A stretch of DNA of 64,000 nt from Squalus acanthias (lineage: Eukaryota): NCBI GenBank assembly GCA_030390025.1, contig CM059452.1:8618001-8682000 (forward strand), in the 5' to 3' direction. Below are positions 29,255 through 58,371 of this stretch, piece after piece (the stretch's first letter is position 1; every line of letters begins with the position of its first letter). The notes under the pieces were generated by a model. It was given only the letters and a program-made list of their open reading frames with translations. It was not told the origin of the DNA and made no database searches. The position numbers were made by a program, and so were the translations under genes.

Positions 29255-29338
29255 GTGTGACGTGGATCCAGTAGCCGCCTCTATCAGGGAATCAATAGGC
29301 GGCGCCTGTAACCTCGCCCCCTTCTACCGGGTATTTAA
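29255..29338 (+). promoter_or_regulatory. IgH promoter: CRE-like TGACGT (29258) and TATA-like TATTTAA (29332); no octamer seen
   Basis: Position 100-175 bp upstream of the leader ATG. Confidence 0.55.
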
Positions 29339-29430
29339 CGGCCGGTCACTGGGACCGCAATACAACAGTCCGGGAGCGGGTTTGCTCAGTGAGTTCTTGC
29401 CGGAACCATTTCCCACACATTGCCAGGAGG

Positions 29431-29476
29431 ATGAGGTCGGCGATTTCTCTCAGTCTGTTGCTGGCTTTCTTATCCG
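29431..29476 (+). CDS. IGHV: IgM VH leader exon (MRSAISLSLLLAFLS)
   Basis: 46 nt, phase 1, G|GTGAGT. Confidence 0.93.
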
Positions 29477-29603
29477 GTGAGTAGTTTTTATTGTCCAAGT
29501 CTCTCACTGTTACTGTCTCAGTGTTAGTCTCTCTCTGGAATGTTACAGAGTCAGGAATCATTTCACCAGGGTTAATTCTCGGGGTCTTTGATTGTTTTTA
29601 CAG

Positions 29604-29952
29604 GTGTCCAGTCGGATGTCGTGTTGACTCAGCCAGATGCAGAGACCGGGAGTCCCAGAGGCTCCCTGAGACTGACCTGTAAAACCAGCGGGTTCAATCT
29701 TGGTAGCACCTACATGTACTGGGTCCGACAGGTTCCCGGACAGGGGCTGGAGTGGCTGCTTGAGTACTACAGTTCATCGAACAAGAACTACGCCCCAGGG
29801 ATTAAGAGCCGATTTACTGCCTCCAAAGACACTTCAAACAACATCTTCGCTTTGGACATGAAGAACCTGAGAACCGAAGACACCGCCATCTATTACTGTG
29901 CAAAATACTACAGTGGGTACAGTGGATGGCGCCATGGTGACGGTGACTGCAG
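29604..29952 (+). pseudogene. IGHV: Pre-joined shark IgM VH-D-D-JH exon; J truncated and out of frame
   Basis: [58 protein letters not shown] + ATACTACAGTGGGT + ACAGTGGATGG + CG + CCATGGTGACGGTGACTGCAG|GTAAG; no RSS. Confidence 0.9.
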
Positions 29953-29994
29953 GTAAGAAACATTCACTCTTTCAGCAACTGTTGTATTTGTGCC

Positions 29995-31265
29995 TTTATT
30001 TTATATTTCTGTTTATTTCAATAATTCATTCATTCACTGAAACTTGGGTTCGGTGGATTCTGTATTGAGATTTTTTGCAATGTTTCATTTGATTCTGCTG
30101 CAAAGGGATAATAGATTTAAACAGTTTCTTCAGGAAAAATTTTGTTGAGGGATTGAGTCCCTGATTGATGTGATTTGGTGTTTATCTGCTGATGAGACTG
30201 TGCGCCTGGGTTACTTTAAATACCTAACGGTTGTTGAACTGTTTGGCGTTTCTACAATGTTTACTCTCGGTGAAATCTAATAGTTGTAGGTTTTCTGATC
30301 AAATGTAAACATTATGTGACTAAATGTGTTTGAAATAAGATTGCAGACAGAAAACAGAAAGCTTTAGCGGTCAAAAATAATCTTAAGATATTTTAATTTA
30401 TTTTTATTTGCGATATTTACATTGTCAGCTTTTAATCTAATGTTCACCAACGGTCATATTCAATACTTGAAATATTACTGTAATTTATAACTAAATAATT
30501 AACAAATTTGTAGCCTGAATGAGATTTAACTTAATATAAATAAAGTTATCATATGTAGTAATATCACTCAATATTACAACAATATGCTATATCAATAGTA
30601 ATTTATTAAACCTGATCCGTCTACTCACAATTCCGCTGTCATTATTTTATATTTTTGTTTATTTCAATAATTAATTCGTTCAGTGATAGATGGTTCGCTG
30701 GATTCTGTATTGTGATTTTTTTGCAATGTTACATTTGATTCTGCTGAAAGGGTTTATAGAATGAAGCTGCTTCTCCACAAAACGTTCTGTTGCGGGATTC
30801 AGCCCCTCAGTGATGTGATTTGCTGTTTATCTGCTGAGGAGAGTGTGTGCCTGGGTTACTTTGAATAAGTAAAGTTTGTGAAACTGTTTGGCGTTTCTGC
30901 AATGTTTAATCTCGGTGACATCGAACTGCTGCAGGTTTTCTGATCTGTTTGAAACTGTTTGAAAGTTGATTGTAGGCAGACAACAAGTAGGTTTTATAAA
31001 TCAAAAATCATTTTAAAATAATTTAATGCATGTTTTTATTTAAGTGAGAATTACAGAGTCAACTATTAATCTCTGGTTTACGGTGCTCACATTTAATAGG
31101 TGAAATGTTACTGAAATTACCAATTATATAATTAACAATTGGCAGGTTGAAGGAGAGTTAAATTAATATAACTCAAACGATTATAATGCGGTAATATTGC
31201 CCAATATCACTAAATATGTTGCAGTATTAATATTAATGTATTAAACATTATTCGCCTTCCACAAT
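29995..31265 (+). repeat. Diverged ~640-bp tandem duplication at the start of the J-C intron
   Basis: 29995-30635 aligns with 30640-31265 (e.g. tggattctgtattg, tgatgtgattt, cctgggttacttt). Confidence 0.85.
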
Positions 31266-31784
31266 TTTGCTGTGCACTAGTCACAATTAACCTGAGCGGA
31301 GAATTTTAGAGGCTGGAGACAATTTCTGATTATGTCTGAAATTATTTTAATAACAGCAGACTGATTCCACCGCAGTGTTCAGTTTAATGAGGGGTTTGAA
31401 ATTAATTGTTATCTCCCTGTTTCACACAGATGAATGACAGATTGTATTTAATTATGTATTAAATGCGAGTATAAATTGCAGTTTATAAATGTAATAAATC
31501 TGCCGGGATATTAAATTCTTACTGTGCAGCGGAAACCATGTTATTCCTTCAATATTATTTGTTGTTCGATAATGAGACAATAATCACTAAACTGATCTTA
31601 AACAGTTTCTAAGATCATAGACTGAGCGGTCGCTGGCAGTCAAAGAATTGTTCATATGATTCTATTTAAATTCACGGAAGGTGCAGACTGCTTAAGGCTG
31701 GTGACAGACAATTGTTGTCTGCAATTGTAAGGTACACATGCTTTGTTCTCTATCTATATATGCTTTGGCGATTCTGTATCTATT

Positions 31785-31872
31785 TACTTCACCTGAGGAA
31801 GGGGCAATCGATAGCTCCGAAAGCTTGTGATTTCAAATAAAACTGTTGGACTATAACCTGGTGTTGTGCGAC
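31785..31872 (+). mobile_element. Penelope-like element 3' remnant
   Basis: cttcacctgaggaagg...ctccgaaagcttgtgatttcaaataaaactgttggactataacctggtg; family assignment from memory. Confidence 0.5.
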
Positions 31873-33644
31873 CTCTCAATTTTGACAGACAAATAACCCA
31901 TTGATATTCAAGCAGATTAATTTAATTATAAAAGGTTAATATTAGTTTTGAATTTAATAACAACATCCTGTCTCCCATTGCTGTGCTGTATACGGGATAG
32001 AATTATAGACCGTGAACAGATTACATCTGAGAGTTATGTTTAATTCTCATTAATGTTAAATTGATCAACAAAATCTCTCCTCCATTTGCTCATTAAATTT
32101 CAGTGTCGCAGATGGTCTGATTGATTTGTTCTCCGCCAGTTTTACACTGATCATTCTGGAACTTATTTCCAATAAATAGCAGAATATATTTAATAATTAA
32201 TTTACGAGCATTGTGTGAATTACGGGAGTAAAGTATAAAAAGATTGTTTGTGTTATTAAATAGCGGAGTCTCTGTTACTGACTGCAAACTGGCCGGTTGT
32301 CTTTTAATTCACGAAAATAGTATTTAAAGTTAAGATTGAGGACAGTGTTTAAACTCGAGACCCTGCTTTAGTAAACATACGGTGTTACAGTCCATCGGTA
32401 GTTAGTGAGATGTGACCACGGCCAGACTTTGAACTATTTAAAATAATCCACTCCTAAATCCATCATGTGAAATCCACTCTGAGAAAAGATGGAGTTTATG
32501 TTGTATCAGAGAGTTCAGGAACATGCAGAGTTTACAAGTGTGTAGATAGAGAGCGGGAATGTATTAGAAGTTAGTGACCATTTTAACTTATTCAAATGTG
32601 ATTTGATTTAAATAAAAATAATATATTTGTCTGAATGTCTTTATTTATTAATATGATTTTTAATATTTTAATATTGATAAGTTTCATGTTAATTTACTTG
32701 AAACCCTATAAGTTCAAAAGTTACCAGGCAGAAACAGGATTAAAATTAATATCAACCAATTTTAATACAATGTAGCTAACATCAATATTAACTTAGAATA
32801 TAATGTGAGTGCGAATTAATTAAACATAAATGACCTCCCACAATTGCGTTGTATACTGGACAGGATTACAGTTACTGCAAAATCTCAAGTGTTGGAGAGA
32901 ATTTTAAATTATGTCTAAAATTAATTTAGAAACAATACATGTCTTACTCAGCTGTGCTCAGCTCGAGAAGGTGTCGCCGCAGATTTTAATGAATTAACTT
33001 CGTGTTTTGCCTCGATGATTTTACCGGTTATATTTAATTATGAAATTATATTAACCCAGTGGGTAATCGGTTTTCAATGTAAATGTCTCCTGGTTTGTTA
33101 AATTCTTGCTCTGTCACGGAGTCCCTGTTATATGCAGCAAATTACTCTGGAATGTGAATGATTTCAGTAAACTGGTTTTCAGGGAAGCTAAATCTTATTT
33201 GTTTGTAAGATTGTAGACAGAGGGGGAGAAATGGTTGGAAGTCGAAGAGAGTTTTTCAAATTAATATCAGTTTAATTTCAAAAAACGTGCAGACTTGAGG
33301 TGGTCGGAAATTGACAAGAGAGCAATTAGAAATCAGCTTCATTGAAATTGACAGATTGAACAGATCTATCTGCTGAGAGCACGATTGTTGCACCGTATGT
33401 GTCTGTTCTGTTTCTGTGCGCCTGCTCACTGTGTGAGAATCAGGAGTCCTCCTGACTGGTTGTAAACCTGCTGGTTTTTTCTCTTGTGTTTCATGGAGTA
33501 CAATTCGAAGCATTTATTTTAGAAGCTTGTATCTGTGAGAAATGCGATAGTTTGACTTTAAGTTTGAGGAGGCGTCTCAGAAATTGGATCAGTAACACAG
33601 TTTGTGACAATCAGAAGGAGCATTTCAGAAACACTTCTGGCAGA

Positions 33645-34345
33645 CTGTAGAAGGAGCTTTAATCAGTTTCTAACCCGTGCCGTATCTGACCTGGGTGTGT
33701 TTGATGGGACAGTGTAGAGGGAGATTTACTCTGTACTTAACCCGTGCTGTACCTGCCCTGGGAGTGTTTGATGGGATAGTGTAGAGGGAGCTTTACTCTG
33801 TATCTAACCCGTGTTGTACCTGCCCTGGGAGTGTTTGATGCGACAGTGTAGAGGGAGATTTACTCTGTACTTAACCCGTGCTGTACCTGCCCTGGGAGTG
33901 TTTGATGGGATAGTGTAGAGGGAGCTTTACTCTGTATCTAACCCGTGTTGTACCTGCCCTGGGAGTGTTTGATGCGACAGTGTAGAGGGAACTTTACTCT
34001 GTACCTAACCCGTGTCGTACCTGCCCTGGGTGTGTTTGATGGGACAGTGTAGACGGAGCTTTTCTCTGTCTCTAACCCGTGCTGTTGTGCCCCGTGAATC
34101 TTTGATGGTTCAGTGTAAAGGGAGAATTTACTCTGTATCTAGCCCATGTTGTACCTGCCCTGGAAATGTTTTATTGTGAAATGTAGGATGGAGCTTTGCT
34201 CTGTATTTAACCAGTCCGGTGCCTTACCCGGAGTGTTTGAGAGTGCTGTGCAGACTTGGCGTTGCTCGGGATCAATCCCTTCCTATACCTGAGGGTACAG
34301 CGGATGGCAGGACAGTGCAGAGGGAGCTTTACTCTGTATCTGTAC
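33645..34345. repeat. 67-bp minisatellite (about 9 copies plus a partial)
   Basis: gtgtagagggagctttactctgtatctaacccgtgctgtacctgccctgggagtgtttgatgggaca; starts at 33712, 33779, 33846. Confidence 0.92.
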
Positions 34346-35099
34346 TGTAACAGATCTGTGAGTGCTTTGTCCCGTGTTGTTCAAGGAACCTTAATGTGCG
34401 TCCAACTAATAAAGTGTGAGTTTCCGCACCAGATATATAAAAATAAAACTTTCCATTGCTCCGATGAAACAACCACGCATTAATTGAGTTTAACCTTATT
34501 GCAAATAAAACTGCCCAATTTTTAATGAATTAATAAACTTTAAGCATTCTGAGTATCAGATAATGATTGAATGAGATTGGCCTGATCCTGAGCTCACTTT
34601 CAGAACAAACAGTTTCAGGAAGTGACTGTAACGCTCCAGAAAGCAGCGCCTGTTCTGATCTGATGGGAGGCTGGAAGTTATTTTGACAATTTAAATAGAG
34701 AATGTCGAGACTCCCGCTCCAAATAACCATCATGGGAACATTATGTTTGAAAGCATTATTTCGTTCAATTGGTTTATTGAAAAGGTAACAGGCCGGGACA
34801 AACGCGTGTGAGGTGCAGCTATTGGACTGGGTCACAGCACAAGGCTCACAGTCACTGAGCCGCACCTCTGTGAAACATTTAAAGAGAAACAGTCAGCCTG
34901 CGATGAGTCGTCATTCACAATAAGCTTTAAGACACTGTGACGGGATCCGATTGAATCATTTGATTCAAATTCCTCAGTTCCTTTATTTTAAACATCCTCT
35001 TGCATTATAACAAACAATAAAATAGATCTGATAGAGGTGTTCAACATTATGAAGCGTTTCCTTCCATTAAATCGGGAAGAACTAATTCTGCTGAGCCGT

Positions 35100-36262
35100 G
35101 CAGAATCATAGAATCTCAGAGCACAGAAGGGGCCACTCGGCCCGTCTTGCCTGTGCTGGCTCTGAAAGAGCTGTCCAATCAAGTCCCAGCTTTTTCCTCG
35201 TAACCCTCCACTGAGTCCTCTTCAAGAACATGTCCAGTTGCCTCGTGCATTCCGGAACTTAACAACCCTCTGTTTGAAAAAAATGAGCCTCAGTTCCCCT
35301 CTAGATATTTTGCCAATTATTTTAAATCTGTGGCCTTTGGTTACCGACATACTCGCCAGAGGAAACCGTTCCTCCCGACATGCTCTGACAAAACCTCTCA
35401 CAATTTTGAACACCTCTATTAGGTCTCTCCTTAACCTTCTCTGCTCCAAGGAACAATCCCAGCTTATCCAATCTCTCCGCATAACTGAAGTCTCTCATCC
35501 CCGGTATCATCCTGGTCAACCTCCTCTGTACCCTCTTCAAGTCCTTGTCATCCTTCCAAAATTGTGGTGGTCAGAATTGAATATCCTACTTCATCTGATG
35601 CCTAACCAGTGATTTGTAAAGGTTTAGCAGGACTTCCTTGTTTTTCTATGCAATGCCCCTTTTACAATGACAAATATCCCACACACTTCCGTAACCACCT
35701 GATCAACTTGCCCTGCCACCTTCACAGATTTGTGAATAAGCTCCCCAGATCCCTCTGCTCTTGCATTCCCCACAAAATAGTACGTTAGATTATACTGACT
35801 CTCCCTGTTGTTCCTCCCAAAGTGCATCACTTCACACTTATCTGCATTAAATTGCATCAGCCACATGTCTGCCCATTTCACCAGTCTGTCTATGTCCTCC
35901 TGAAGTCCGCTGCTATCCTCCTCCCGAGTTACTACGTTGCCAAGTTTTGCATCATCTGCGAACTTGGAAACTGTACTCCCTATAAACAGGTCCAGGTAAT
36001 TGATATATAAAACATGAAAAGCAATGGTCCTAATACCGACACAAGTGGGACCCCACTGCATACTTCTCTCCAGTCAGAAAAACATCCGTTCACCACTACT
36101 CTCTGCCTCCTCTCCCTTAGCCAATTACATACCCAAGTTACCTCCATCCTTTAATGTGTTTCTATTTTCCGAATAAGTCTTTTATGAGATACTTTATAAA
36201 ATGCCATTTGAAAGTCTATATGTACAACATCTACTGCAACACCATCATCAACTCTCTCTGTT
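35100..36262 (-). mobile_element. CR1 RT fragment
   Basis: ORFs 35222-35540, 35624-36061 (SKFADDAKL). Confidence 0.88.
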
Positions 36263-38050
36263 ACTTCACACTGTAGACCGAGCTTTCAGTATCTGACCAA
36301 TACGCCGCAGGTGTTTGACTTATCCGCACAAACCAGAAGCCAGAGTTGCCCACATCAGCAGTCAGCATATTAGTTATTGTTTGTCCTTCCTTGCATAGAA
36401 CCCGCTGATAACCAATCGATTTAGAATGTTTAAGGATTGCCAATATTAGATATTTAGAGAAGAAACCTGTCCCGATGTTTAGATTATTTTCGGTACAAAC
36501 AGCAACAAGAAGTGACTGTAACGACCCAGAAAGCAGCGCCTGTTCTCTCTGGTGGGAGGGTGGAAAGTAATTTGGAAAATGCAATGGAGCATTTAAAGAG
36601 CATCGTTCCATATAACCGGCTTTGGGAATCGTATTTAATTCGGATTATTTAATTGAGTGAGTGGGAGGAGGAAAGTCAGGAGACATCCATTCAGTAGAAT
36701 GGGATAGAGCTCAAGTCACACTGCATCGCTCTTCCTCCAATTCTGAGAAGGAACGAGAGAGACTCGAATCAATCCCGATTCATCTAAAGCTTGAATCTTA
36801 GAAACCAGGCTGTGCAAAAGTTCCCAATTCAAATCTGTGCGTTAAATTATTCCGCTCACATTTTAAAGGAGACTTCAACCATTTATTGTAAACGTCCTTT
36901 ATTGTCATGGGAACAAAGAAGATTTAGATGAGGTCTGATAGAGGGGTTTGGAATTATGAAGGGTTTTATGAAGGGATTCGGGAAACATATATCCCCGAGT
37001 CGGTGAGTTGGTGAGTAAATGGCACTGATTGAAAATCAGCAGCAACAGAATGAAGGGTGTCGGAATTATTCTACTTTTCTACACAGGGGGCTGTTGAACA
37101 TGGGATGTCCTATCAGAAAGAGGGCTGCATGCAGAATCCACAATAGCTCGATAAAATTGCACAGTTGAGAAGATTGGGAATTGGAAGGTGCACGGGATTG
37201 GTGGAGAGATCTTTCAGAGGCGTGACTGGCCCAATAGCCTCCTTCTGTGCTGTAAAGTTGTATTATTTTATAATTCCGGTCATGCTTTATAAACATGCTG
37301 GGATTTGTTTTAAAGGTAATACAACTAGTAGATCTAGCTGTAGGAGTTGTGTGATGAGGAGAACTAATCCCACCGCTATTCAAACAAGTCTATCCCCTGA
37401 AAACAACAACTTGCATTTATATAGCGCCTTTAACGTAGTAAAACGTCCCAAGACGATTCACAGGAGCGTCAGCAGATACAATCTGACACCGAGCCACATA
37501 AGGAGATATTATTTTATTCTTTAGTATGGTTGGTAGTTACTCTGACAGTTGACCAAAAGCTTGGTCAAAGAGGTAGGTTTTAAGGCAGCATCTTACAATG
37601 GAGAAATGACGACACTTTGATATCATGGAATGGCCTGATTCTGTGCTGATAATAAGAGGCTGACAGCAAAAGGATGTAGGGAGGAGCTCAGTGGACAGAA
37701 TGTGAAAGAATCTAATGTGAAAGTGGTTGAGGATTGAGGGGAGTGTTCCATAACAAGGATCAAGAGCTGGAGGAAGTCCCGATACAATATTCCGGCATTC
37801 ACTCGGTATAAAGGGGCCTCATGGACAGAATGCCCCTTTCAGACTCCTGACTTTTCTTATGTACAAGACTGGAGTCACATGAAGGCATTTCACGTCGGGT
37901 CTCACAATTCACAGAAACTCAAATGCTGATCTAGGTTTTGATTGGCAAATGATGGAATTGTTCATTCTGTAGTCACATTTCGAGTTGTTTGGTTATGTTA
38001 TAAGCACGGATTACAGAGTCTAACTTGTTCAATTGGCCATTCTTTCCCAG

Positions 38051-38350
38051 CGACACAGTCTCCTCCCACCCTCTACGCCCTGCTCTCCTCCTGTGAACAA
38101 CCCAACACCGGCGGCCCCGTCACCTACGGCTGTTTGGCGATGGACTACTTCCCGGAAATCACCAGCCTTTCCTGGAGTAAAGATAAAGAGCCGATCACCA
38201 CTGGATTTAAGACCTATCCGTCAGTGTTCAACAAGCAGGGAACCTACACCCTGAGCAGCCAGTTAACTATCACCGAGTCAGAGGTGGGGAGCAGCACAAT
38301 CAACTGCCAGGTGCGACAAAGTGGGTCGGACTTAAGCATCAAAATGCTAG
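38051..38350 (+). CDS. IGHM: IgM Cmu1 exon
   Basis: [47 protein letters not shown]; cccag| and G|GTCAG, phase 1. Confidence 0.95.
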
Positions 38351-38379
38351 GTCAGTGTTGTGGGATACAGGGGGAAACT

Positions 38380-39215
38380 GTGAAAAGCAGAGAAGTTATG
38401 TTCAACTTCTATACAACCTTGGTTAGACCAGACTTAGAGTACTGTGCACACTTCTGGTCTCCATATCACACTTAGTGCACTGAGCACAGTTCTGGTCTCC
38501 ATCTCACACTTGGAGTGCTGAGCGCATTTCTGGCCTCCATATCAGATTTACAATACTGTGCACAGTTCTGGTCTCCACAACATACTTAGAGTATTGTGAA
38601 CAGTTGTAGTCTCCATATCACACTTAGTGTACTGTGCACAGTTCTGTTCTCCATATCACACTTACAATTCTGTGCACAGTCCTGGTCTCCATATCACACT
38701 TGGAGTGCTGAGCACAGTTCTGGTCTCCATATCACACTTACAATACTGTGCACAGTTCTGGTCTCCATATCACACTTAGTGTACTGTGCACAGTTCTGGT
38801 CTCCATATCACACTTAGAATACTGTGCACAGTTCTGTTCTCCATATCACACTTAATGCACTGTGCACAGTTCTGGTCTCTATATCACACTTACAATTCTG
38901 TGCACAGTTCTGTTCTCCATATCACACTTAATGTACTGTGCACAGTTCTGTTCTCCATATCACACTTACAATACTGTGCGCAGTTCTGGTCTCCATATCA
39001 CACTTAGTGTACTGTGCACAGTTCTGTTCTCCATATCACACTTACAATTCTGTGCACAGTTCTGTTCTCCATATCACACTTACAATACTGTGCACAGTTC
39101 TCGTCTCCATATCACACTTAGTGTACTGTGCATAGTTCTGTTCTCCATATCACACTTCCTGTACTGTGTAGAGTTCCGGTCTCCATATCGCTCTTAGAAT
39201 ACTGTGCACAGTTCT
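38380..39215 (+). repeat. CR1 RT fragment expanded into a 38/39-bp minisatellite (about 20 copies)
   Basis: [26 protein letters not shown] followed by repeats of ttagtgtactgtgcacagttctggtctccatatcacac. Confidence 0.92.
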
Positions 39216-39339
39216 GCTCTCTGGAAGTGCCAGGTTAGCGTGAGCCTGACAGTAAAGGGCCTGTTAAAATATAAGGACACTTTGCATTTCTTAATCATTT
39301 ATTTTATAAGGAATGTCATTAACATGTGTTCTTTTGAAG

Positions 39340-39657
39340 TATCGAAACGTGATATCGTCCCTCCAACTGTGATCCTCACCCTGAGTTCCAGTGAAGAAAT
39401 CACCAGCAGCAGGTCTGTAACCGCCGTGTGCTCAATCATCGATTTCCGTCCAAAGTCACTGACCGTGAATTGGCTGAAGAATGGACAACTCATGGATTCG
39501 GGCTTCGTCACCTCTCCCGTCTTTGAAGTGAACGGGAACTTCTCGGCGACCAGTCGGCTGACATTCACCGCCGGGGATTGGTTCGCCGACTCGGTCTATA
39601 CCTGCCAGGTCACTCATGAACGAATCCCCCAAAGCAGAAACATCTCCAGATCTAAGG
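39340..39657 (+). CDS. IGHM: IgM Cmu2 exon
   Basis: [44 protein letters not shown]; ttgaag| and G|GTAAG. Confidence 0.94.
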
Positions 39658-40589
39658 GTAAGAGACACAACCCCGGGAAGTTCCAGATCATTCTGAGCGC
39701 CGATCTCAGTCAGGACTTTTATTGGAATTAGTAAAAAGCACAGAACAATTTCTAATTTCCAATCATACAGTTTGTGTTTCCTTCCGATGTCAGTGCTGAC
39801 TCAGGGTTCCTCACGGTTCAGGATTCCATCACTTCGCCAAATGTTTCCCTCAGCTGTGATGTCAGACAGTGAATGAGGTGTCCTCAGTCTCAGGTTTACC
39901 CTGAGAAAGCTCTATTTCTAATTTCCAATCATGCTGTTTGTGTTTTCTTCCGATATAAAAGAAAAGAAAGAACTGCCTTTACATAGCGCCATTCCCGACC
40001 TCCGGACGTCCCAAAGCGCTTTACTGCCAAGGAAGTACTTCCTGAAATGTGGTCACTGTTGTAATGTAGAAATCGCGGCGGCCAATTTGCAGACAGTAAG
40101 GTCCCACAAACAACAATGTAATAATGACCAGAGAATCTTATTATTTGGTGATGTTTGTTGAGGGATAAGTATTGGCCAGGACACCTGGGAGAACTGGCCT
40201 GCTCTTCCTCGAAATAGTGCCATAGGATCTTTTACGTCCACCTGAGAGAGCAGACGGGGCGTCGGTTTAACTTCTAAAGCGAAAGACGGCACCTCCGTCA
40301 GTGCAGCTCTCCCTCAGTGCTGCACTAGGTGTGTCAATTTACATTTTGTGTTCAAGTATTTGGAGTGAGACTTGAACCCACGATCTTCTGAATCAGGATT
40401 CCTCAGGTTCATGATTCCATAACCTCGCCAAAGGAGGTTTCCCTCTGCTCTGATGTCAGTCAGTGAGTGAGGTGTCTTCGGTCTCAGGTTAATCCTGAGT
40501 TGGCTGATCATATTCGGAGCGGCAGTAGGTGTCTGGAACCCTTTACTGGTAACTGTCTCGGGACCCACTGCTAGAAAGGGCATCTTCCC

Positions 40590-41140
40590 TATTTAGAGAA
40601 CTGCGTTCAATTCTGGACACCGCGCATCAGGATGGATATATTGGCCTTGGAGGGGCCGCAGTGCAGATTTAAAAGAATGACACGGGGATAAAAGTGTTAA
40701 ATAATGAGGAGAGGCTGCACAGATAGACTCGTATTCCTCTGAGTATAGAAGATTAAGAGGTGATCTAATTGAGGTGTTTAAGTTGATAAATGGAATTGAT
40801 AGGGGAGATAGAGAGAAACTAATTCCTCTGGTGCGGGAGTCCAGAACAAGAGGCATAACCTTAAAATTAGAACTGAGCCGTTCAGGGGTGATGTCAGGAA
40901 ACACTTCTTCACACGAAGGACAGTGGAAATCTGGAACTCTCCCCGCCAAATGCTCTTGAGTCTGTGGGCCAATTGCAAATTTCAAAACTGAGATTGATAG
41001 ATGTTTGTTAGGCAAAGGTATCAAGGGTTACAGAAACAAGGCGGGTAGATGGTGTTGAGGTGTAGATCAGCCATGATCTCATTGAATGGCGGAACAGGCT
41101 GGATGGGCCGAATGGCCTGCTCCTGGTCCTCTGTTGCTAT
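40590..41140 (+). mobile_element. CR1 3' fragment
   Basis: RRLRGDLIEVFK-like sequence and typical 3' UTR. Confidence 0.85.
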
Positions 41141-41833
41141 TACTGCCCTGCGGTCATATTTCCTCTCTCTCAAACCAGACATGTTAAGTGCTCACAAATG
41201 ACAGAAATGAACAAACTACTTCATATCGGCATTACACATTATTCACCACCACAAAAGACCCCTTGGAACTCCATTCTCCCGACCTTTCACTTCTCCTCTG
41301 ACGGGGCCGCAACTGATTCCTGCACATTTTCATCGCCCCCAAAATCGCAACAAGACACCAGAAAATTAACTTTGTTTCCTGTTGCAATAAAATCCTGGAT
41401 TTCATTTGACACTCGGTTTGAACCAGTGTAATTTTCGTGTAGAGCTCTTGACCCTGGGGGAGGGACCATTATAATGAGCGGGAATGCGTTCGGGGACAAG
41501 GAGCTATAGAGTGGCGTAAAGGAGCAAGGGATTTCGGGAAGATCGCTATTTACTGCCTAATAAAATTGCGGCCGAATTTATTCAAAGTTTTTACGCCGGG
41601 TGTTTGCTTCACAGCCGATTACAGGAGGCTCTGGGAGCAAATACACAGGAAATGTTAAAGTGTCTCGGGGAATCGTTGTCAATTCGTTGTCCTTCCAATA
41701 ACGATGGTGTTTAAGCAACAACGAGAGGTTAATCTCTCAAAGGTGATTTATTCTTCCTGAGAGAGTGAAGGCTGAATACTGGTGTCCTGATTCTGAAGAT
41801 GAAGCTTTGCTTGACTTTCTTTTCTGTTCTCAG

Positions 41834-42142
41834 ATGAGATCCAATGCAACGATCCAGAAATCACTCTTCCGCAACCGTCACTAGAACAAGTCTTACTGGA
41901 GGCGACGGTGACCTTAACCTGCGTCGTGTCTAATGTTCCTTATGGAGTCAACGTGTCCTGGACCCGAGAAAAGGAGACTTTGAAATCAGAGATTGCCGTC
42001 CAACCCGGAGAGGCTCCCAACAGCGTGATCAGCAACTTAAACATCTCGACACAAGCCTGGCTGAGTGGGGATGAGTTCTACTGCGTGGTAAGCCATCAGG
42101 ATATGCCGACTCCTATAAGAGATTCCATCCACAAGGAAAAAG
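41834..42142 (+). CDS. IGHM: IgM Cmu3 exon
   Basis: [45 protein letters not shown]; ctcag| and G|GTGAG. Confidence 0.95.
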
Positions 42143-42661
42143 GTGAGCGGTGAGATTGTAGCAATAAGTGAGACACTGTGACTATTTCCGGTGCTTGTGC
42201 ACGGCCCAATTCGTTCTATTCAGTGTTTTAATGGACTGCTCTGATAATTCAAAAGCTATTTCCACTAACTATACCCTCTGCGACCCGAGATGATGCATTT
42301 AAAGGGAAGCTGGATAAGTCAATGAGGGAAAAAGGAATAGAAGGATATGTTATGAGGGTTAGAGGAAGTAAGGTGGGAGGAGTCTCGTGTGGAGCATTAG
42401 CAGCAGCATTCATCAGTTGGACCGAATGGTCTGTTTCGATGATGTAAATTCTATAAAAAATTTCCTGTCCAACTCTTCAAGCTCCCAGAGAGAAGGATTG
42501 TATCCCCCTCTGCTCGGGGCTGGAAAACCGGACAGGACACAGAGGGGGAAAGTGAATCGTTCAAAATTCAGTGCAAAGCACATTTCTCTCACATCTAACC
42601 GCCGGTTGCATTGTCTCTGGAATTCTCCTCTTTATTGACCTTTATTGTAATTGTTTTGCAG

Positions 42662-43053
42662 TTGAAGATCCGCGGGAACCGTCCGTGTCTGTCCTCCTGC
42701 CCCCGGCAGAAGAAGTCTCCGCTCAGAGGTTCGTGACCCTCACCTGCTTAGTGAGAGGTTTCTCCCCCCGAGAGATCTTCGTCAAGTGGACCGTCAATGA
42801 CAAGCCGGTGAATTCCGGCAACTACAAGAACACCGAGGTGATGGCGGAGAACGGCAGCAGTTCCTTCTTCATGTACAGCCTGTTATCAATTACAGTGGAG
42901 GAGTGGGCCAGCGGCGCATCTTATACCTGTGTGGTGGGACATGAAGCGATCCCCTTGAAGATCATCAACAGAACGGTTAATAAAACCAGCGGTAAACCCA
43001 GTTTTGTGAACATTTCCCTTGTTCTGATGGATACCGTCAATTCTTGTCAATGA
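42662..43053 (+). CDS. IGHM: IgM Cmu4 exon plus secretory tailpiece (internal donor for the membrane form after 42991)
   Basis: [50 protein letters not shown]; N-x-S glycan site and penultimate Cys. Confidence 0.96.
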
Positions 43054-43081
43054 GAATCTCTCGATTGCATTTCAGTTGTTG

Positions 43082-43097
43082 AATAAAAACCAATAAA
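43082..43097 (+). terminator. Tandem AATAAA polyA signals for the secreted mu transcript
   Basis: AATAAA at 43082 and 43092. Confidence 0.8.
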
Positions 43098-43489
43098 GGC
43101 CTTTTCTTCCAATCGTCAGTTACACACACAGCCGCTCAATTAATTTTGTTTTCCATTTTTGCCAAGGGGAGGGCTGTTTATCTGAAGTAGGATATTTGCT
43201 GGTCTCGGACCCAAGGCTTGTACAGCCAGCGCTCCCAGCTCAGATACACCACGGGTTAGAGACAGACTGAAGCTCTTTCATGACAGGATTCCTCAAAGTC
43301 ACTTCAGCAACTTTCCTCCCGCTGGGGGAAATCAAAAAGTTCCCATTTCAGACAGACAAACGCAGCACATTTAGATCTCGGTGTCCCTGTTTCTCGTGCT
43401 GTCCATCCCTTCAGAATTGGGGCCTGTTTTATTTTGCAGCATCGCACCCTCTGGGATACGATATAAGGCAACTCACGCACACGAACTGT

Positions 43490-44883
43490 CACCCCTACTC
43501 CCCCACCAGAGAGAGGGGAAAGGGCAATTGTTAACCCACTGTACCTCCCACTCCCCCACTAGAGAGAGGGGAAAGGGCAATTGTTAACCCACTGTACCCC
43601 CCACTCCCCCACCAGAGAGAGGGGAAAGGGTAATTGTTAACCCACTGTACCCCCACTCCCCCACCAGAGAGAGGGGAAAGGGCAATTGTTAACCCACTGT
43701 ATCCCCACTCCCCCACCAGAGAGAGGGGAAAGGGCAATAGCTAACGCACTGTACCCCCCACTCCCCCACCAGAGAGAGGGGAAAGTGCAATTGTTAACCC
43801 ACTGTACCTCCCACTCCCCCATCAGAGAGAGAGGAAACGGTAATTGTTAACACACTGTACCCCCACTCCCACACCAGAGAGAGGGGAAAGGGCAATTGTT
43901 AACCCACTGTCCCCCCACTCCCCCACCAGAGAGAGGGGAAAGGGCCATTGTTAACCCACTGTACCCCCCACTCCCCCACCAGAGAGAGAGGAAAGGGTAA
44001 TTGTTAACCCACTGTACCTCCCATTCCCCCACCAGAGAGAGGGGAGAGGGCAATTATTAACACACTGTCCCTCCCACTCCCCCACCAGAGAGAGGGCAAA
44101 GGACAATTGTTAACCCACTGTACCCCCGCTCCCCCACCAGAGAGAGGGGAAAGGGCAATAGCTAACCCACTGTACCCCCCACTCCCCCACCAGAGAGAGG
44201 GGAAAGGGCATTTGTTAACCCACTGTACCCCCACTCCCCCACCAGAGAGAGGGGAAACGGCAATAGCTAACCCACTGTACCCCCCACTTCCCCACCAGAG
44301 AGAGGGGAAAGGGCAATTGTTAACCCACTGTACCTCCCACTCCCCCACCAGAGAGAGGGGAAAGGGCAATTGTTAACCCACTGTATCTCCCACTCCCCCA
44401 CCAGAGAGAGGTAAAAGGGCAATTGTTAACCCACTGTACCGCCACTCCCCCACCAGAGAGAGGGGCAAGGGCAAGTGTTAACCCACTGTACCCCCACTCC
44501 CCCACCAGAGAGAGGGGAAAGGGCAATTGTTAACCCACTGTACCTCCCACTCCCCCACCAGAGAGAGGGGAAAGGGCAATTGTTAACCCACTGTACCCCC
44601 ACTCCCCCACCAGAGGCAGTGGAAAGGGCAATTGTTAACCCACTGTACCCCCACTCCCCCACCATAGAAAGGGGAAAGGGCAATTGTTAACCCACTGTAC
44701 CCACACTCCCCCACCAGAGAGAGGGGAAAGGGCAATTGTTAACCCACTGTACCTCCCACTCTCCACCAGAGAGAGTGGAAAGGGCAATTGTTAACCCACT
44801 GTTCACTCACACACCCAACAGAGAGAGGGGAAAGGGCAATTGTTAACCCACTGTACCCCCCACTCCCCCACCAGAGAGAGGGG
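43490..44883. repeat. 52/53-bp minisatellite (about 26 copies)
   Basis: cccactcccccaccagagagaggggaaagggcaattgttaacccactgtac. Confidence 0.95.
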
Positions 44884-45584
44884 AGCTGCACAACTTTCTA
44901 TTATAGTAACTCAGTTCCCATCAGTAAAAAGTCAGCTTCTAACTCACTGTCCAAAATCGTTAAACCTGCCGCATGGGAATCAAATTGTAAAATAAATATT
45001 TATTCAACATCTTTAGCTAGTATTTTGGGTAAACCCGTCCCTGTTATTCGTAAACTAACAGATTGAATTTTAATAGTCCAACCCTAAACTGGCGATTGAA
45101 TCCTCTCAGGGTTTCTCACGGTTGTGTCCCTGAAGGTTCTGAGGCCCATCGGTTGAATTGTTGCATTCCATCGGCTGACGTCACAATGCGTCTCCCACAG
45201 AACACATTTACATAGAGCGGGGAAGAATGCGTGTAAAAGTGAGTGTGTCTGTGTTTATGTGTAAGTGTGTTTGCAATTTTGTGTAAGTGTGTGTATTTTG
45301 TGTCAGTGCACACACACACATAAACACACACGCACTTACACATAAACACACATTAACACACTGACACAGAATATTACACATACCCAGGATATAATACACA
45401 CCGTCATTGTCAGACCCAGTTATTGGTGCTCTCTGAAACTTTGAACAATAGCAAAAATACACACACACACCCTTACACAAAACACACACAAACACACGCA
45501 TTAACACACACACACTTACACACGCATAAACACACACATCAACACAAAAACACACTTACACAAAACACACACTTATAATTACAA

Positions 45585-47212
45585 TCACCAGGGAAGTGGT
45601 ACTGAGCAAATTGTTGGAACTCCGGTCTGACAAGTCCTCGGGTCCTGATGAACTTCATCCTAGGGACTTAAAAGTAGTGGCTGGTGAGGTAGTTGATGCG
45701 TTGGTTTTAATTTTCCAAAATTCCCTAGATTCGGGGAAAGATCCATTAGATTGGAAAATAGCGAATGTAACTCCTTTATTCAAAAAGGGAGGGAGACAGA
45801 AAGCAGAAAACTACAGGCCAGTTAGCTTAACATCTGTCATAGGGAAGATGTTAGAAGCTATTATTAAAGATGTTATAGCAGGGCACTTAGAAACGTTCAA
45901 GGTAATGAGGCAGAGTGAACAAGGTTTTGTGAAAAGAAAATAATGTTTAACCAAATTATTGGAGTTCTTTGAGGAAGTAACATGTGCTGTGGATAAAGGG
46001 GAACCGGTGGATGTACTGTACTTAGATTTCCAGAAGACATTTGAGAAGGTGCCACATCAAAGGTTATTGCGGAAAATAAAAGATCATGGTTTAGGGGGTA
46101 ACATATTGGCATGTATAGAAGATTGGCTAGCTAATAGGAAACAGAGAGTAGGCAGAAATGGGTCATTTTCTGGTTGGCAAGTTGTAACGAGTGGTGTGCC
46201 ACAGGGATCAGTGCTGGGGCTTCAACTTTTTACAATTTATATAAATGACTTGGATGAAGGGACCGAAGGTATGGTTGCTAAATTTGCTGATGATACAAAG
46301 ATAGGTAGGAAAGTAAATTGTGAAGAGGACATAAGGAGGCTACAAAAGGATATAGATAGGTTAAGTGAGTGCGCACAGATCTGGCAAATGGAGTATAATG
46401 TGAGAAAATGTGAAATTCTCCATTCTGGCAGGAAGAATAAAAAATAAGCATATTATCTAAATGGTGAAAGATTGCAGAGCTCTGAGATGCAGAGGGATCT
46501 GGGTGTCCTAGTGCATGAATCGCAAAAGGTTAGTATGCAGGTATAGCAAGTAATTAGGAAATCTAATAGAATGTTATCGTTTATTGCGAGGGGAATTGAA
46601 TACAAAAGTAGGGAGGTTATGCTTCAGTTATACAGGGCATTGGTGGGACCACATCTGGAGTACTGTGTACAGTATTGGTCTCCTTTTTTAAGGAAGGATG
46701 TAAATGCGTTGGAAGCAGTTCGGAGAAGGTTTACTAGACTAATACCTGGAATGGGCGGGTTGTCTTATGAGGAAAGGTTGGACAGGCTAGGCTTGTATCC
46801 GCTGGAATTTAGAAGAGTAAGAGGTGACTTGATTGAAACATGTAAGATCCTGAGGGGTCTGAACAGGGTGGATGTGGAGAGGATGTTTCCTCTTGTGGGA
46901 GAATCTAGAACTGGGGGTCACTGTTTAAAAATAAGGGGTCGCCCATTTAAGACAGAGATGATGAGACATTTTTTCTCACAGAGGGTCGTGAGTCTTTGGA
47001 ACTCTCTTTCTCAGAGGGCGGTGGAAGCAGAGGCTTTGAATATATTTACGGCAGACGTAGATTCTTGATAAATAAGGGGGTGAAATGTTATCGGGGGTAG
47101 GCGGGAATGTGGAGTAATCAGGTCAGCCATGATCTTATTAAATGGCGGAGCAGGCTCGAGGGGCCGAGTGGCCTACTCCTGCTCCTATCTTCTATGTTTC
47201 TATGTTTCTATG
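45585..47212 (+). mobile_element. CR1 RT 3' half inserted within a CA-rich simple repeat
   Basis: ORFs 45596-45943, 45959-46447, 46571-47068; (ctatgttt)n tail. Confidence 0.92.
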
Positions 47213-48064
47213 GCGGCGGTTGTTATACACATAAACACACACATGAAGGCATTTAGACACAAACGCACACACACTTAAACATAAACACACACAATTACAC
47301 ATAGATACACCTACATAGAATTACACATAAACACACACACTTACACATCAACACACACATTAACACACAAACAGAGACGATACCAAAACAAGAGATCGTC
47401 AGACTCACAAATGCAAACACTAAAGCGCGCAAAAAACGTCAGGCTATCGACGAATGTAGAATTAAAATTCACTTTTTTACGGACTCAGTATCACACGATT
47501 ATACTGATTGAATAATTCCTGATTCCATAACATCTCACATTTCTCTATTCTGCTCCTACACATACACTGAATCAATGTTCTTGTTGGAAACTGATACAAG
47601 TTAATTATATTCAGAGCACTGCCAAAACAAATAAATAAACAAGATTATAACTCACATCTAATATCTTACCCAGCCCCCTTGACAGTCTCCAAATAAGTAG
47701 CTATCTAAACCTATCATTAAAATAATCGATATCAATCAGTAAACCTCCCTCGATATTTCATATAATTCTCGAATGATAGATTGTATGAAATTGATGCAAA
47801 ATCAATTAGCGTGTGACATTGAAGAAAAGAAATATCATATTTTCCAACACGGACTATAGGAGGATCCTAAAGGAAGAGCGACTGTGGAATTAGGAACAGA
47901 GATAGATTGCTGACAGTGATTAACTTAACACAAGATATACATTGAAAATTCAATTAGAGAACAAACTGATACCTTAAGGAAAATAAAAGAGAATATATAA
48001 TAATAATAAGATATCTTTATTTAATAAAGGATCTGAATATATTTCCTCCTCTACATCCCCGTAG

Positions 48065-48192
48065 ATTCGTCAGACCACATCTTGATTGAAGACTATGAGG
48101 AAGAGAGCGGCAGCATCTGGACAACCGCTTCCACATTCATCATCCTGTTCTTCCTGAGCATGTCCTACAGCGCTGCCCTCACTCTAGTGAAG
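48065..48192 (+). CDS. IGHM: IgM transmembrane exon TM1
   Basis: cgtag|DSSDHILIEDYEEESGSIWTTASTFIILFFLSMSYSAALTLVK|GTGAG; Ig TM motif. Confidence 0.93.
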
Positions 48193-48332
48193 GTGAGAAG
48201 ATTCAATCCACTCACACTTCGATCTGACTGAAGCGGTTTGACAAATCTCTAAAAGTTTCATTGATTAAAACCCTGAGATAAATGCCCCAAACCACTAAAT
48301 CTCTGCTTCATTCTTTTATCCCTCTTTTACAG

Positions 48333-48341
48333 GTCAAGTGA
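48333..48341 (+). CDS. IGHM: IgM TM2 exon (VK*)
   Basis: ttttacag|GTC AAG TGA; AATAAA at 48405. Confidence 0.9.
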   Translation, partial: VK

Positions 48342-48973
48342 ACGGTTGAATTTCGGACGCCGTGGATTTTCTTCATCTGTTTATTAACATCTCTGTGTCA
48401 TGAAAATAAAATATATCCTCTTGGTGATTCTCAGAGTCAAATGTCTTCAGTTAATAGATCCGAATCTGAAGCTGAGAAAATCATAACCGGGATTTCCGTC
48501 TCTCTGTTTGAAATGTGTGAGATAATCGTGGCTATAATATAAATGTTTCTTAGAGTTTCACCGTTGTTTGAATATTTCATGTGTAAATAAGTCACTTTTC
48601 TCAATCCTAATTCACAATTGTTCCCTTCCCTTTATGTAGAGCCCCTGTTTTCTCTCCCTGGTGCCTGTTACAGTTGTACAGATAACTGGCAGCTCAGACC
48701 GCCTGTGTTCAGGTCTCAATGTGACGCTCGGTTTTAATATTCACTTTGTGTTAATTTTTGAAAAACTTCACTGTAAATTGATCTCTGTGAAATTGTTAAT
48801 AAATCTGGAATGACAAATTGACTAATTTAGACTTTGCTGAATTCCTTTATCCAAGGCTCGTCCACACGCCCCATTTTCCCAATCACACTTTGTTTTATTT
48901 CCCTGACAGGTATTTTTCACCCGTCCTGTCTGGGTTGTGTTTGAACACAAGTCCCTTCGGTTAAGGAGCCACT

Positions 48974-51556: not shown

Positions 51557-51667
51557 CGTTTTGGTACACTAGGGACGTTGAATAGTTACAATTAATGCTC
51601 ATTGAGGTTCCTTCCAGATATTGGGCTTCTGTTGGCCACTGCTTCAAGGAATCTCCAGAACTCAGTC
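51557..51667 (-). pseudogene. TCR V FR1 fragment (same family as 5740) fused to a nonamer remnant and downstream flank of another V family
   Basis: GLSSGDSLKQWPTEAQYLEGTSMSINCNYSTS, then ACCAAAACG-CACACTGAGAGGGCGC; 51350-51556 matches 55263-55480 inverted. Confidence 0.85.
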
Positions 51668-54790: not shown

Positions 54791-55222
54791 ATGTGCTCCC
54801 CGTGTTCCATACTGATAATAATGGTCGTGCTGTCCAGTGAGTACATGTGTAAATGGTCATTGTGTGTTTCACGGATTATCCTTACTCCCAGACTTTTGAC
54901 ACATTCTGTGTTTTGTTACAGGAACGAGTGGCAAAGAATCAGTGTCCCAGGATCCGTCTGAATTAATGGTTCAGCAAGGAAAAAACATTATATTGAACTG
55001 CAGTTACTCGGCAGCTGCTCCAACTCTGTTCTGGTACATCCAGTATCCCGGGGAAGCTCCGAGATATTTACTGAGGATAGATAGCTCGGGGACGGTAGAC
55101 CGGTCTCCAGATTTCCCAGGCCGGTTTTCTGCTGTTTTGCACAGAGACAGCAAAACGGTTCCTTTAAATATCACCGCGGTTCTTGTCTCCGACAGCGCCG
55201 TGTATTTCTGTGCCATGAGCCC
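54791..55222 (+). CDS. Intact TCR alpha/delta-type V segment (leader 54791-54836, V exon 54922-55222)
   Basis: SVSQDPSELMVQQGKNIILNC..LFWYIQ..GRF..DSAVYFCAMS. Confidence 0.92.
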
Positions 55223-56574: not shown

Positions 56575-57050
56575 ATGCGGCTACTCAGCATCTGGGCTGT
56601 GTGGGGGGCATTTCTGACAGGTAATTATGGACCAAACACATTTCATCTTTTCTATCATTTCTAAACATGGTTTGACTCTGAATTTTAAACACCCGCTGGG
56701 GTGATCTTTTCAAGTTTGAACATGTTTTTCAGATCTGAGTCTTGGAGATTCTGTCACTCAGCCGCTGTCCTCAGGAGTTAAGACAGAAGGAGAAGCGATG
56801 ACTGTAAACTGTAGCTACGACACAAAATGGAGCACCTTTAATTATTTATATTGGTACCGGAACCACCCAGACACACAGCCCGAGTTTATACTGTGGAAGG
56901 ATCATGATGGTGTTGATGGTGTTGAGCATAAAGCAGATTTTGGTAAAACCCGTTTCTCTGCAGAAATCCAGACCTGGACTAAATTCACCAGTTTAACCAT
57001 CTCGGGGCTGCAGCTGACCGACGCTGCAGTTTATTACTGCGCCCTGAGAC
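56575..57050 (+). CDS. Intact TCR alpha/delta-type V segment (leader 56575-56620, V exon 56733-57050)
   Basis: MRLLSIWAVWGAFLT-DLSLGDSVTQP..VNC..LYWYRN..RFSAE..DAAVYYCALR. Confidence 0.92.
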
Positions 57051-57801: not shown

Positions 57802-58371
57802 TGTGTTTGTACGGGGCTCCCTGTGGTTCCTGTCACTGTGTCTCTCAGCCCGCAGTGATACACCGCGCTGTCAGACAGCCGTAGGCCGCGGATGGTGAAA
57901 TTCCCCTCACTTTCTGAAATGTCGTGAAATGCGGAAATTCGAGCCCCCCTGTCCTCTGCTTTGAAAACATCTCCCGAAGAAGGACTGTAGATCAGCAATG
58001 TTGGCCCTTTGTCGCGGTCCTGACGGTACAGTTGTAAGGAATGTGAAGGAGCAGTGGTCGAATTGCTGTAATTACTGGTCACCGAGTCTCCTTCAAACTG
58101 CATCGCTGCAAGCGGCCCCTGTGAGACCGAGTCCGCACAACTAACACCCGCAGAAATATAGAAATACACAACTTTAAACCTATCTTATCATTTTATTATA
58201 ACTGACAGTTTCAAGGTGACGGAACATACAGGAAATTGAGGGAAAATACAGTTAAAAGGAAGATTCTCTATGGCAGTGATACGTGCAAGAGGGAGGATTG
58301 TGTAACTTGTAAACTTTACCAGTTAAGAGAGCCGCAGCTGTGACGAATGAATTAAAAGTAACTCCTAACAT
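57802..58371 (-). pseudogene. TCR V pseudogene (leader 58320-58371, V 57841-58147, RSS 57802-57840); acceptor AG->GG, first Cys and FR2 Trp lost
   Basis: ADSVSQGP..EGDSVTSNYS..LQLYRQ..DSAVYHCGLR; CACAGTG-23-ACAAACACA. Confidence 0.88.

What the first reader, a model, noticed from the sequence alone, without database searches (positions are those of the whole stretch)
29255..48410. A whole IgM heavy-chain cluster embedded inside a TCR alpha/delta V array
Seen: promoter, leader, VDDJ, Cmu1-4, secretory tail, TM1 and TM2 are flanked on both sides by TCR-type V segments with 23-RSS, and the same V families occur left and right. Established: sharks carry IgH as many separate V-D-D-J-C clusters, and nurse shark TCRdelta can use IgM/IgW VH segments, with IgH-like sequence reported at the TCRdelta locus. 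Inference: this is a full B-cell receptor transcription unit nested in the T-cell locus. It could be a relic of ancestral IgH-TCRad linkage or a later insertion, and it would be deleted or inverted when T cells rearrange distal Vs.
Basis: partly seen in the sequence, partly recalled or inferred. Interest (0 to 1): 0.9.

Follow-up and report, generated by a model that had tools for sequence, protein, structure and literature searches.

The report
Shark IgM cluster among TCR V segments
A complete but non-productive shark IgM heavy-chain gene cluster really does sit between T-cell-receptor alpha/delta-type V segments, but this intermingling of antibody and T-cell-receptor genes in sharks and rays was already published in 2025.

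Summary
On the + strand lie a split leader, a VH exon, four open Cmu exons, the mu secretory tailpiece, TM1, TM2 and AATAAA (29431-48410). Seven TCR alpha/delta-type V elements lie on each side. Seven of the 14 carry a strict 23-RSS (8 such sites in the window against 0.37 in shuffles). Three V families have a member on both sides.

Two corrections. V-D-D-J is fused in the germline with no RSS. Its J remnant lacks W-G-x-G, and the V frame is one base off the J/Cmu1 phase, so it stops 15 codons into Cmu1. The unit is exon-complete but cannot make a normal mu chain. Only 4 of the 14 flanking Vs look intact.

The TCR alpha/delta assignment rests on named database hits (15 of 16 specifically named among the 120 best), on the RSS type, and on the absence of any adjacent J or C. 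I could not obtain TRBV/TRGV/IGLV references for a full phylogeny.

The arrangement is in print. Flajnik et al. [quoted passage not shown] The scan's own unchecked notes list at least ten other IgM/TCR-V junctions in this genome, so this looks like a mosaic, not one nested insertion. The read-based boundary test was inconclusive. Interest is low to moderate.

The parts
29431..29476 (+). IgM leader exon (46 nt, phase 1, GTGAGT donor)
29604..29952 (+). VH exon fused in the germline to D-D-J. There is no RSS. The Cys codon is at 29897-29899, the junction at 29906-c.29930, and the J remnant lacks W-G-x-G. The V frame leaves 2 bases at the donor, but Cmu1 needs 1.
38051..38350 (+). Cmu1 exon (C1-set, open, phase 1)
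39340..39657 (+). Cmu2 exon (C1-set, open)
41834..42142 (+). Cmu3 exon (C1-set, open)
42662..43053 (+). Cmu4 exon with the secretory tailpiece and stop. An inner G|GTAAAC donor after 42991 serves the membrane form.
48065..48192 (+). TM1 exon
48333..48341 (+). TM2 (V-K-stop); AATAAA follows at 48405-48410
1350..1625 (-). TCR alpha/delta-type V with an open frame, a leader and a 23-RSS at 1347. Same family as 54936.
2610..2870 (-). TCR-type V pseudogene (in-frame stop) with a 23-RSS at 2604
5751..6029 (+). TCR-type V with an open frame but no Trp41 and a degenerate RSS. The fragment 51573-51656 is its relative.
7216..7458 (+). TCR-type V pseudogene (several stops)
11869..12162 (-). TCR-type V with Trp41 lost and a 23-RSS at 11866. 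Inverted paralogue of 56744.
13245..13361 (+). truncated TCR-type V fragment
16333..16626 (+). intact TCR alpha/delta-type V with a leader and a consensus-perfect 23-RSS at 16629
51573..51656 (-). truncated V fragment, cut by a LINE reverse-transcriptase ORF
54936..55217 (+). intact TCR alpha/delta-type V with a leader and an RSS (24-nt spacer) at 55223
56744..57049 (+). TCR alpha/delta-type V with an open frame, a leader and a weak RSS (heptamer 2 mismatches, nonamer 2)
57843..58136 (-). TCR-type V that has lost Cys23 and Trp41, with a 23-RSS at 57840
59669..59950 (+). divergent V pseudogene (stop at the Trp41 position) with an RSS (22-nt spacer) at 59951
60041..60332 (-). frameshifted TCR-type V pseudogene
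61498..61593 (+). truncated V fragment

Best explanation
The window is a piece of the elasmobranch IgH/TCR alpha-delta linkage region, called the 'antigen receptor complex' by Flajnik et al. 2025. In that region, self-contained IgM miniclusters and TCR alpha/delta-type V segments are interspersed.

Shown here:
- One IgM minicluster has every exon.
- Its V, D, D and J were fused in the germline. By established knowledge of shark germline-joined Ig genes, this happens through RAG activity in germ cells.
- The join is out of frame and removed the FR4 W-G-x-G motif, so translation from the leader ATG stops 15 codons into Cmu1.
- The cluster is therefore a V-region pseudogene with a still intact constant region.
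- Of the 14 TCR-type V elements around it, in both orientations, 4 look usable and 10 are decayed. LINE fragments fill the spacers.

Inferred:
- The mosaic grew by local duplication and inversion of blocks in a region where IgH and TCR alpha/delta genes were linked from early on.
- If an intact V beyond the cluster joins to TCR D/J, the cluster is excised or inverted, depending on orientation.
For: Anatomy and frames. Domain identity. There is no RSS at the VH end and no 12-RSS element anywhere. There is no further C exon; the next best hit has E 0.083 against 1e-37 or better for the four Cmu exons.

Flank Vs: a profile of 7 flank Vs found 4909 proteins. Of the 120 listed, 16 carry a specific receptor name: 15 are TCR alpha or alpha/delta V and 1 is 'Ig lambda V-II', apparently an automatic name (my inference). 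RSS enrichment is 8 against 0.37.

Left-right paralogues. LINE content: 6 of 10 large ORFs are RVT_1, 1 is an endonuclease and 3 have no family.

Literature: Flajnik et al. [quoted passage not shown] Germline joining by RAG-like activity: Lee et al. 2000, PMC2193156, abstract read. IgH genes rearrange partially in shark thymocytes: Malecek et al. 2008, PMC2435157, passages read.

Unchecked scan notes report NAR-TCR Vs 16-21 kb before the window and many other IgM/TCR-V junctions.
Against: - No phylogeny against TRBV, TRGV, IGLV or IGKV was possible. PDB sequence searches do not separate TCR V-delta/V-alpha from Ig V-light for these Vs.
- The tree holds only TCR-named or unnamed rows plus VH. 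Half of the window Vs sit on unresolved or long branches. One pseudogene (2610) even pairs weakly with VH (83/70).
- TRDC, TRAC and PSMB5 were not seen, because they lie outside the window.
- No read or contig bridges an Ig exon and a TCR V. Only contigs of 302 nt or less were listed.
- The species is unknown. Cmu4 is 81% identical to a Chiloscyllium punctatum fragment.
- The mosaic picture rests on unchecked notes and on one paper whose table S1 I could not open.
Confidence: 0.8

Rival explanations
1. Later insertion. A single IgM minicluster was copied or moved into a pre-existing, purely TCR alpha/delta V array and split it.
For: The same three V families lie left and right, as if one array had been cut. 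The paralogues are in opposite orientation, so rearrangement happened around the cluster.
Against: - The left and right paralogues are only 86-95% alike and do not lie in mirror order, so there is no clean insertion footprint.
- No target-site or duplication boundary was found.
- Unchecked notes list many other IgM/TCR-V junctions in the genome.
- The pattern is reported in four species, which favours an old, repeatedly reshuffled mosaic.
Confidence: 0.1
2. The flanking Vs are not TCR alpha/delta segments. They would be orphan or Ig-related Vs, such as light-chain relics or the Ig/TCR-intermediate Vs mentioned in print.
For: PDB scores for human V-delta/V-alpha and V-light are nearly tied. One of the 16 named hits is called Ig lambda. 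V 59669 and V 2610 are divergent. Flajnik et al. mention Vs intermediate between TCR and Ig.
Against: - 15 of 16 specifically named hits are TCR alpha or alpha/delta V, at 103-130 bits.
- The Vs carry a 23-RSS with no J or C beside them. The paper says elasmobranch light chains come as V-J-C miniclusters.
- The C-A-L/V/M ends are typical of TRAV/TRDV. This last point is recalled, not tested.
Confidence: 0.06
3. Assembly artefact. An IgM cluster was mis-joined into a TCR V contig.
For: The region is repeat-rich: LINEs, and SINE-like units with word depths in the millions. No independent contig bridges the boundaries. In all four runs many unique positions carry letters other than the window's.
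Against: - The window has 64 kb without any N.
- Two independent mis-joins would be needed.
- Paralogous TCR Vs lie on both sides.
- The same kind of junction is noted at many places in the genome and is published for four other assemblies.
Confidence: 0.03

Closest known systems
Elasmobranch antigen receptor complex: IgM/IgW/IgNAR miniclusters linked to TCR alpha/delta (Flajnik et al. 2025, Sci Adv, PMC12227049; sections 6 and 15 read)
   Same: IgH miniclusters lie on the same DNA as TCR alpha/delta-type V exons, with TCR-type Vs between IgH clusters. NAR-TCR Vs are nearby according to unchecked scan notes.
   Different: The paper gives a map-level description; its table S1 was not visible to me. 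Three details of this window are not in the text I read: the dead germline-joined VDJ with an intact C region, the 4-of-14 intact Vs, and the inverted paralogue pairs. Whether this species is one of the paper's four is unknown.
Germline-joined Ig genes of cartilaginous fish (Lee et al. 2000, J Exp Med, PMC2193156, abstract read; Malecek et al. 2008, PMC2435157, passages read)
   Same: V, D and J are fused in the germline with loss of all RSS, inside a normal minicluster.
   Different: The join here is out of frame and has lost FR4, so it is a pseudogene. The germline-joined genes described in that abstract are expressed, mainly early in ontogeny.
IgH-like V segments inside TCR delta loci: TAILV and VH-delta (Deiss et al. 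2019; known to me only from the reference list and discussion of PMC12227049; the paper itself is not held)
   Same: Ig heavy-chain sequence lies within TCR alpha/delta territory.
   Different: Those are lone VH-like segments with an RSS that TCR delta uses. Here there is a whole cluster with its own C and TM exons, and its VH has no RSS, so it cannot be donated by ordinary V(D)J joining.

Membership tests
Elasmobranch IgM heavy-chain minicluster | Split leader plus VH (V-set) exon | tested here: met
Elasmobranch IgM heavy-chain minicluster | D and J elements beside V, either with RSS or germline-joined | tested here: met
   Germline-joined form: there is no RSS at the V end, and one exon runs to a J-type donor. 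D identity was not testable without reference D segments.
Elasmobranch IgM heavy-chain minicluster | Four C1-set constant exons, a mu tailpiece with Cys, and TM1/TM2 ending K-V-K | tested here: met
Elasmobranch IgM heavy-chain minicluster | Open reading frame from the leader through C (functional gene) | tested here: not met
   The V frame leaves 2 bases at the donor and Cmu1 needs 1. A stop follows 15 codons into Cmu1, and FR4 W-G-x-G is absent.
TRAV/TRDV gene segments | Leader, V-set exon and a 23-RSS directly 3' of it | tested here: met
   Seven of 14 elements have a strict RSS. Four of 14 have a leader, an open frame, both Cys, Trp41 and an RSS.
TRAV/TRDV gene segments | Closest named relatives are TCR alpha/delta Vs | tested here: met
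   15 of 16 specifically named hits among the 120 listed
TRAV/TRDV gene segments | Phylogenetic separation from TRBV, TRGV, IGLV/IGKV and IGHV | tested here: inconclusive
   Only VH and TCR-named or unnamed rows were available for the tree. PDB scores do not discriminate.
TRAV/TRDV gene segments | Use in rearranged TCR alpha or delta transcripts | not testable with these tools
   No raw RNA reads were offered; only Logan contigs were served.
IgH/TCR alpha-delta antigen receptor complex (Flajnik 2025) | IgH cluster and TCR alpha/delta-type Vs on one contiguous stretch | tested here: met
IgH/TCR alpha-delta antigen receptor complex (Flajnik 2025) | Linkage to the TCR delta/alpha C genes and PSMB5 | not testable with these tools

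The most novel reading that the evidence does not exclude
The constant region of this cluster stays perfectly open although its own VDJ is dead, because it is used by other V regions. One route would be TCR-type or NAR-TCR Vs joined in cis to the D-J cassettes of nearby IgH clusters. Another would be splicing onto these Cmu exons. Either would give TCR-V/Cmu chains, the mirror image of the known Ig-VH/TCR-delta chimeras. Alternatively, the C exons are kept open by gene conversion among the interspersed clusters.
Probability: 0.05. Interest if true: 0.85.

Novelty: already known. Interest (0 to 1): 0.3.

Why it matters
The physical mixing of antibody heavy-chain clusters with TCR alpha/delta V segments has three uses. 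It explains how sharks make Ig-V/TCR-delta chimeric chains in cis. It gives a reason why both receptor types are open to hypermutation and to RAG in thymocytes. It also bears on how the IgH translocon arose.

All of this was set out by Flajnik et al. in 2025. This window adds a base-level example: exact exon borders, a germline-joined dead VDJ beside an intact C region, the decay state of 14 neighbouring Vs, and inverted paralogue pairs. It does not add a new principle.

Tried and rejected
- PDB sequence searches with two flank Vs and with the 7-V profile. The lists are dominated by chains with two or more V domains. Among single-V chains, human V-delta, V-alpha and V-light score almost alike. 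I rejected this as a classifier.
- Single-sequence homologue search with V 16333. It gave 2 hits among 4 candidates, both generic names, so it was uninformative.
- Species identification. The best Cmu4 match is 81% (Chiloscyllium punctatum fragment) and 63% to Callorhinchus IgH. Flank Vs are at most 60-63% identical to any stored protein. Run names were coded. The species stays unknown.
- Boundary test with reads. Only Logan contigs were available, the listed pieces were 302 nt or shorter, and none bridged. The repeats at 49.1-50.3 kb and 51.7-53.9 kb have word depths in the millions. The possible RNA run X17 covers 47.9-48.9 kb (TM exons and 3' UTR) but also the TM1-TM2 intron, so it shows neither splicing nor expression.
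- Octamer search found none. I treat the 'promoter' as unverified, not as refuted.
- I looked for a simple palindrome around the cluster. The paralogues are inverted but not in mirror order, so I rejected this.
- Papers by Deiss 2019, Ott 2021 and Criscitiello 2010 are not held. I know them only from the reference list of PMC12227049. Table S1 of that paper (supplement) was not opened and may already list this cluster.
- Searches for other print sources found only PMC12227049 as directly relevant. ('TAILV') matched unrelated words.


Full report
**What is there.** The window is 64,000 bases with no N. On the + strand between 29.4 and 48.4 kb lies a complete IgM heavy-chain minicluster. Borders were read from the DNA:
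- leader 29431-29476, with a GTGAGT donor
- V exon from 29604
- Cmu1 38051-38350
- Cmu2 39340-39657
- Cmu3 41834-42142
- Cmu4 42662-43053, ending in a secretory tailpiece and containing the inner G|GTAAAC donor after 42991
- TM1 48065-48192
- TM2 48333-48341, so the chain ends K-V-K
- AATAAA at 48405-48410

Every C and TM exon is open, starts in phase 1 and keeps its Cys-Trp-Cys pattern. Pfam calls VH a V-set domain and each C exon a C1-set domain. Cmu4 with its tail aligns to the last residue of human IGHM chains at E about 1e-50. A local HMM of the four Cmu domains finds no fifth C-type exon in the window; the next best hit has E 0.083.

**The V region is dead.** No RSS follows VH. After the Cys codon (29897-29899) the sequence runs through about 27 nt of junction into a J remnant and a GTAAGA donor at 29953. 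V, D, D and J are therefore fused in the germline.

The J remnant keeps only its last codons, and the FR4 W-G-x-G motif is absent. The V frame reaches the donor with two bases left over. Cmu1 starts with two bases that complete a codon, so it needs one base. Read from the leader ATG, translation meets TGA 15 codons into Cmu1. The frame that fits Cmu1 is the J frame, one base off the V frame.

The scan's note s1-889971 says the same, and I confirmed it independently. I could not assign D1 and D2, because no reference D segment is at hand. No ATGCAAAT or ATTTGCAT octamer exists in the window, so the 'promoter' is unverified.

**The flanks.** tblastn with three window Vs finds 14 TCR-type V elements besides VH, seven on each side and in both orientations. 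Reading each one gives this:
- Four have a leader, an open frame, both cysteines, Trp41 and an RSS: 1350-1625(-), 16333-16626(+), 54936-55217(+) and 56744-57049(+). The RSS of the last one is weak.
- The other ten have stops or frameshifts (2610, 7216, 59669, 60041), have lost Cys23 and/or Trp41 (5751, 11869, 57843), or are truncated (13245, 51573, 61498).

A strict scan finds eight heptamer-22/24-nonamer sites. Block shuffles give a mean of 0.37 and a maximum of 3, and none of 200 reaches eight. Seven of the eight sit directly at a V end; the one at 26637 does not. No 12-RSS D- or J-like element is present. These are therefore V-only segments, not V-J-C light-chain miniclusters.

**What kind of V.** A profile of seven flank Vs retrieved 4909 proteins at E <= 0.001 among 6699 candidates, and 120 were listed. 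Of these, 104 have generic or no names. The other 16 carry a receptor name: 15 are TCR alpha or TCR alpha/delta variable, from teleosts and gar, and one is 'Ig lambda V-II' from a turtle, apparently an automatic name (my inference). No hit is named TCR beta, TCR gamma or Ig heavy.

PDB sequence searches did not discriminate. A maximum-likelihood tree of ten window Vs and 27 stored proteins shows three left-right pairs:
- 1350 with 54936, in a starred four-row clade (100/95)
- 11869 with 56744 (93/73), inside a clade with Chiloscyllium and Callorhinchus Vs (94/96)
- 5751 with 57843 (96/82)

VH sits on a very long branch. The pseudogene 2610 joins VH weakly (83/70), and 16333 and 59669 are unresolved. 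The tree has no TRBV, TRGV or IgL rows, because I had no permitted source for them. The C-A-L/V/M ends of the Vs fit TRAV/TRDV; that point is recalled, not tested.

**Left-right relation.** Inverted repeats join 12063-12878 to 56040-56843 (87-95%) and 1552-1807 to 54754-55009 (86%). The truncated V at 51573-51656(-) matches the start of 5751(+). The copies are inverted but not in mirror order, so there is no simple palindrome or clean insertion scar. The spacers are full of LINE pieces: of ten large ORFs, six hit RVT_1, one hits an endonuclease family and three hit nothing.

**Artefact test.** The look-up of sequencing runs offered only Logan contigs under coded names. I laid four runs on 47901-53900, which covers TM1, TM2, the 3' end and the V fragment. 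All 30 bins have depth in the three DNA runs. However, the listed pieces are 302 nt or shorter and none bridges an Ig exon and a V. Two stretches are high-copy repeats. At many unique positions every contig of every run carries another letter than the window. The test is inconclusive.

Arguments against an artefact are indirect. The sequence is gap-free. Two mis-joins would be needed. The same kind of junction occurs elsewhere in this genome and in print.

**Context in the genome.** These are unchecked first-stage notes. NAR-TCR V cassettes lie 16-21 kb before the window. IgM constant regions or clusters next to TCR alpha/delta or NAR-TCR Vs are noted at about -1.36, -1.18, -0.95, -0.50, -0.32 and -0.15 Mb, at +0.69 and +8.3 Mb, and on other pieces. 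This changed my reading from 'one cluster nested in a TCR array' to 'one tile of a megabase-scale mosaic'. I did not verify these notes. No note names a TCR C gene.

**Literature.** Flajnik et al. [quoted passage not shown] Their coordinates are in table S1, which I could not open, so it may already list this cluster.

Lee et al. 2000 (PMC2193156, abstract) attribute germline-joined shark Ig genes to RAG-like activity in germ cells. Malecek et al. 2008 (PMC2435157, passages) report pseudogene IgH loci and partial IgH rearrangement in thymocytes. Searches turned up no other directly relevant paper, and one search was wasted on an ambiguous term.

**How it most likely works.**
- Shown: the cluster is an autonomous transcription unit by anatomy, but it cannot encode a mu chain from its own leader.
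- Inferred: it was inactivated at the moment of an out-of-frame germline join. Its C region is still open either because the event is recent or because of conversion among clusters.
- Inferred: the four intact neighbouring Vs can rearrange to TCR D/J. Whichever side the D-J-C genes lie on, at least one intact V lies beyond the cluster, so its use would excise or invert the cluster.
- Shown and inferred: the VH of this cluster has no RSS (shown), so it cannot be donated to TCR delta by ordinary joining (inferred).

**Verdict.** The value of the window is as a base-level example.

Noticed in passing
window 33646-34240; 38432-39221; 43485-44884: There are three minisatellites inside the mu unit: 67 nt x 8.9 in the J-Cmu1 intron, 38 nt x 20.8 starting about 80 nt after Cmu1, and 52/105 nt x 26.7 about 430 nt after the secretory stop. 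By my reading of its ORFs, the 38-nt unit looks derived from a LINE coding motif.
   Followed up: partly
window 30102-30300 and 30747-30945: The intron just 3' of J is tandemly duplicated (81% identity, 645 nt apart). There is no second J in front of the second copy.
   Followed up: partly
window 49242-50202 and 53784-54745: Inverted arms that are 95-97% alike and bear LINE sequence bracket a V fragment (51573-51656, -). The fragment is cut by a reverse-transcriptase ORF at 51586-52203.
   Followed up: partly
window 12063-12878 vs 56040-56843: In this inverted paralogue pair the upstream flank is 90-95% alike, but the part overlapping the V exon is only 87% alike. The left copy has lost Trp41.
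   Followed up: no
window 59669-59950: This is a divergent V on a long tree branch, at most 34% identical to any stored protein. It has a stop exactly at the Trp41 codon but a good RSS. It could be one of the Ig/TCR-intermediate Vs mentioned in print.
   Followed up: no
window 47901-49100 and 50300-51700: In all four public runs laid here, many unique positions show only letters that differ from the window. Word depths are in the hundreds to thousands. The contigs therefore seem to come from paralogous copies or from other individuals.
   Followed up: no
window 1-64000: No Ig octamer (either strand) occurs anywhere in the window, including upstream of the IgM leader. Only a TATA-like TATTTAA lies about 95 nt before the ATG.
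   Followed up: partly
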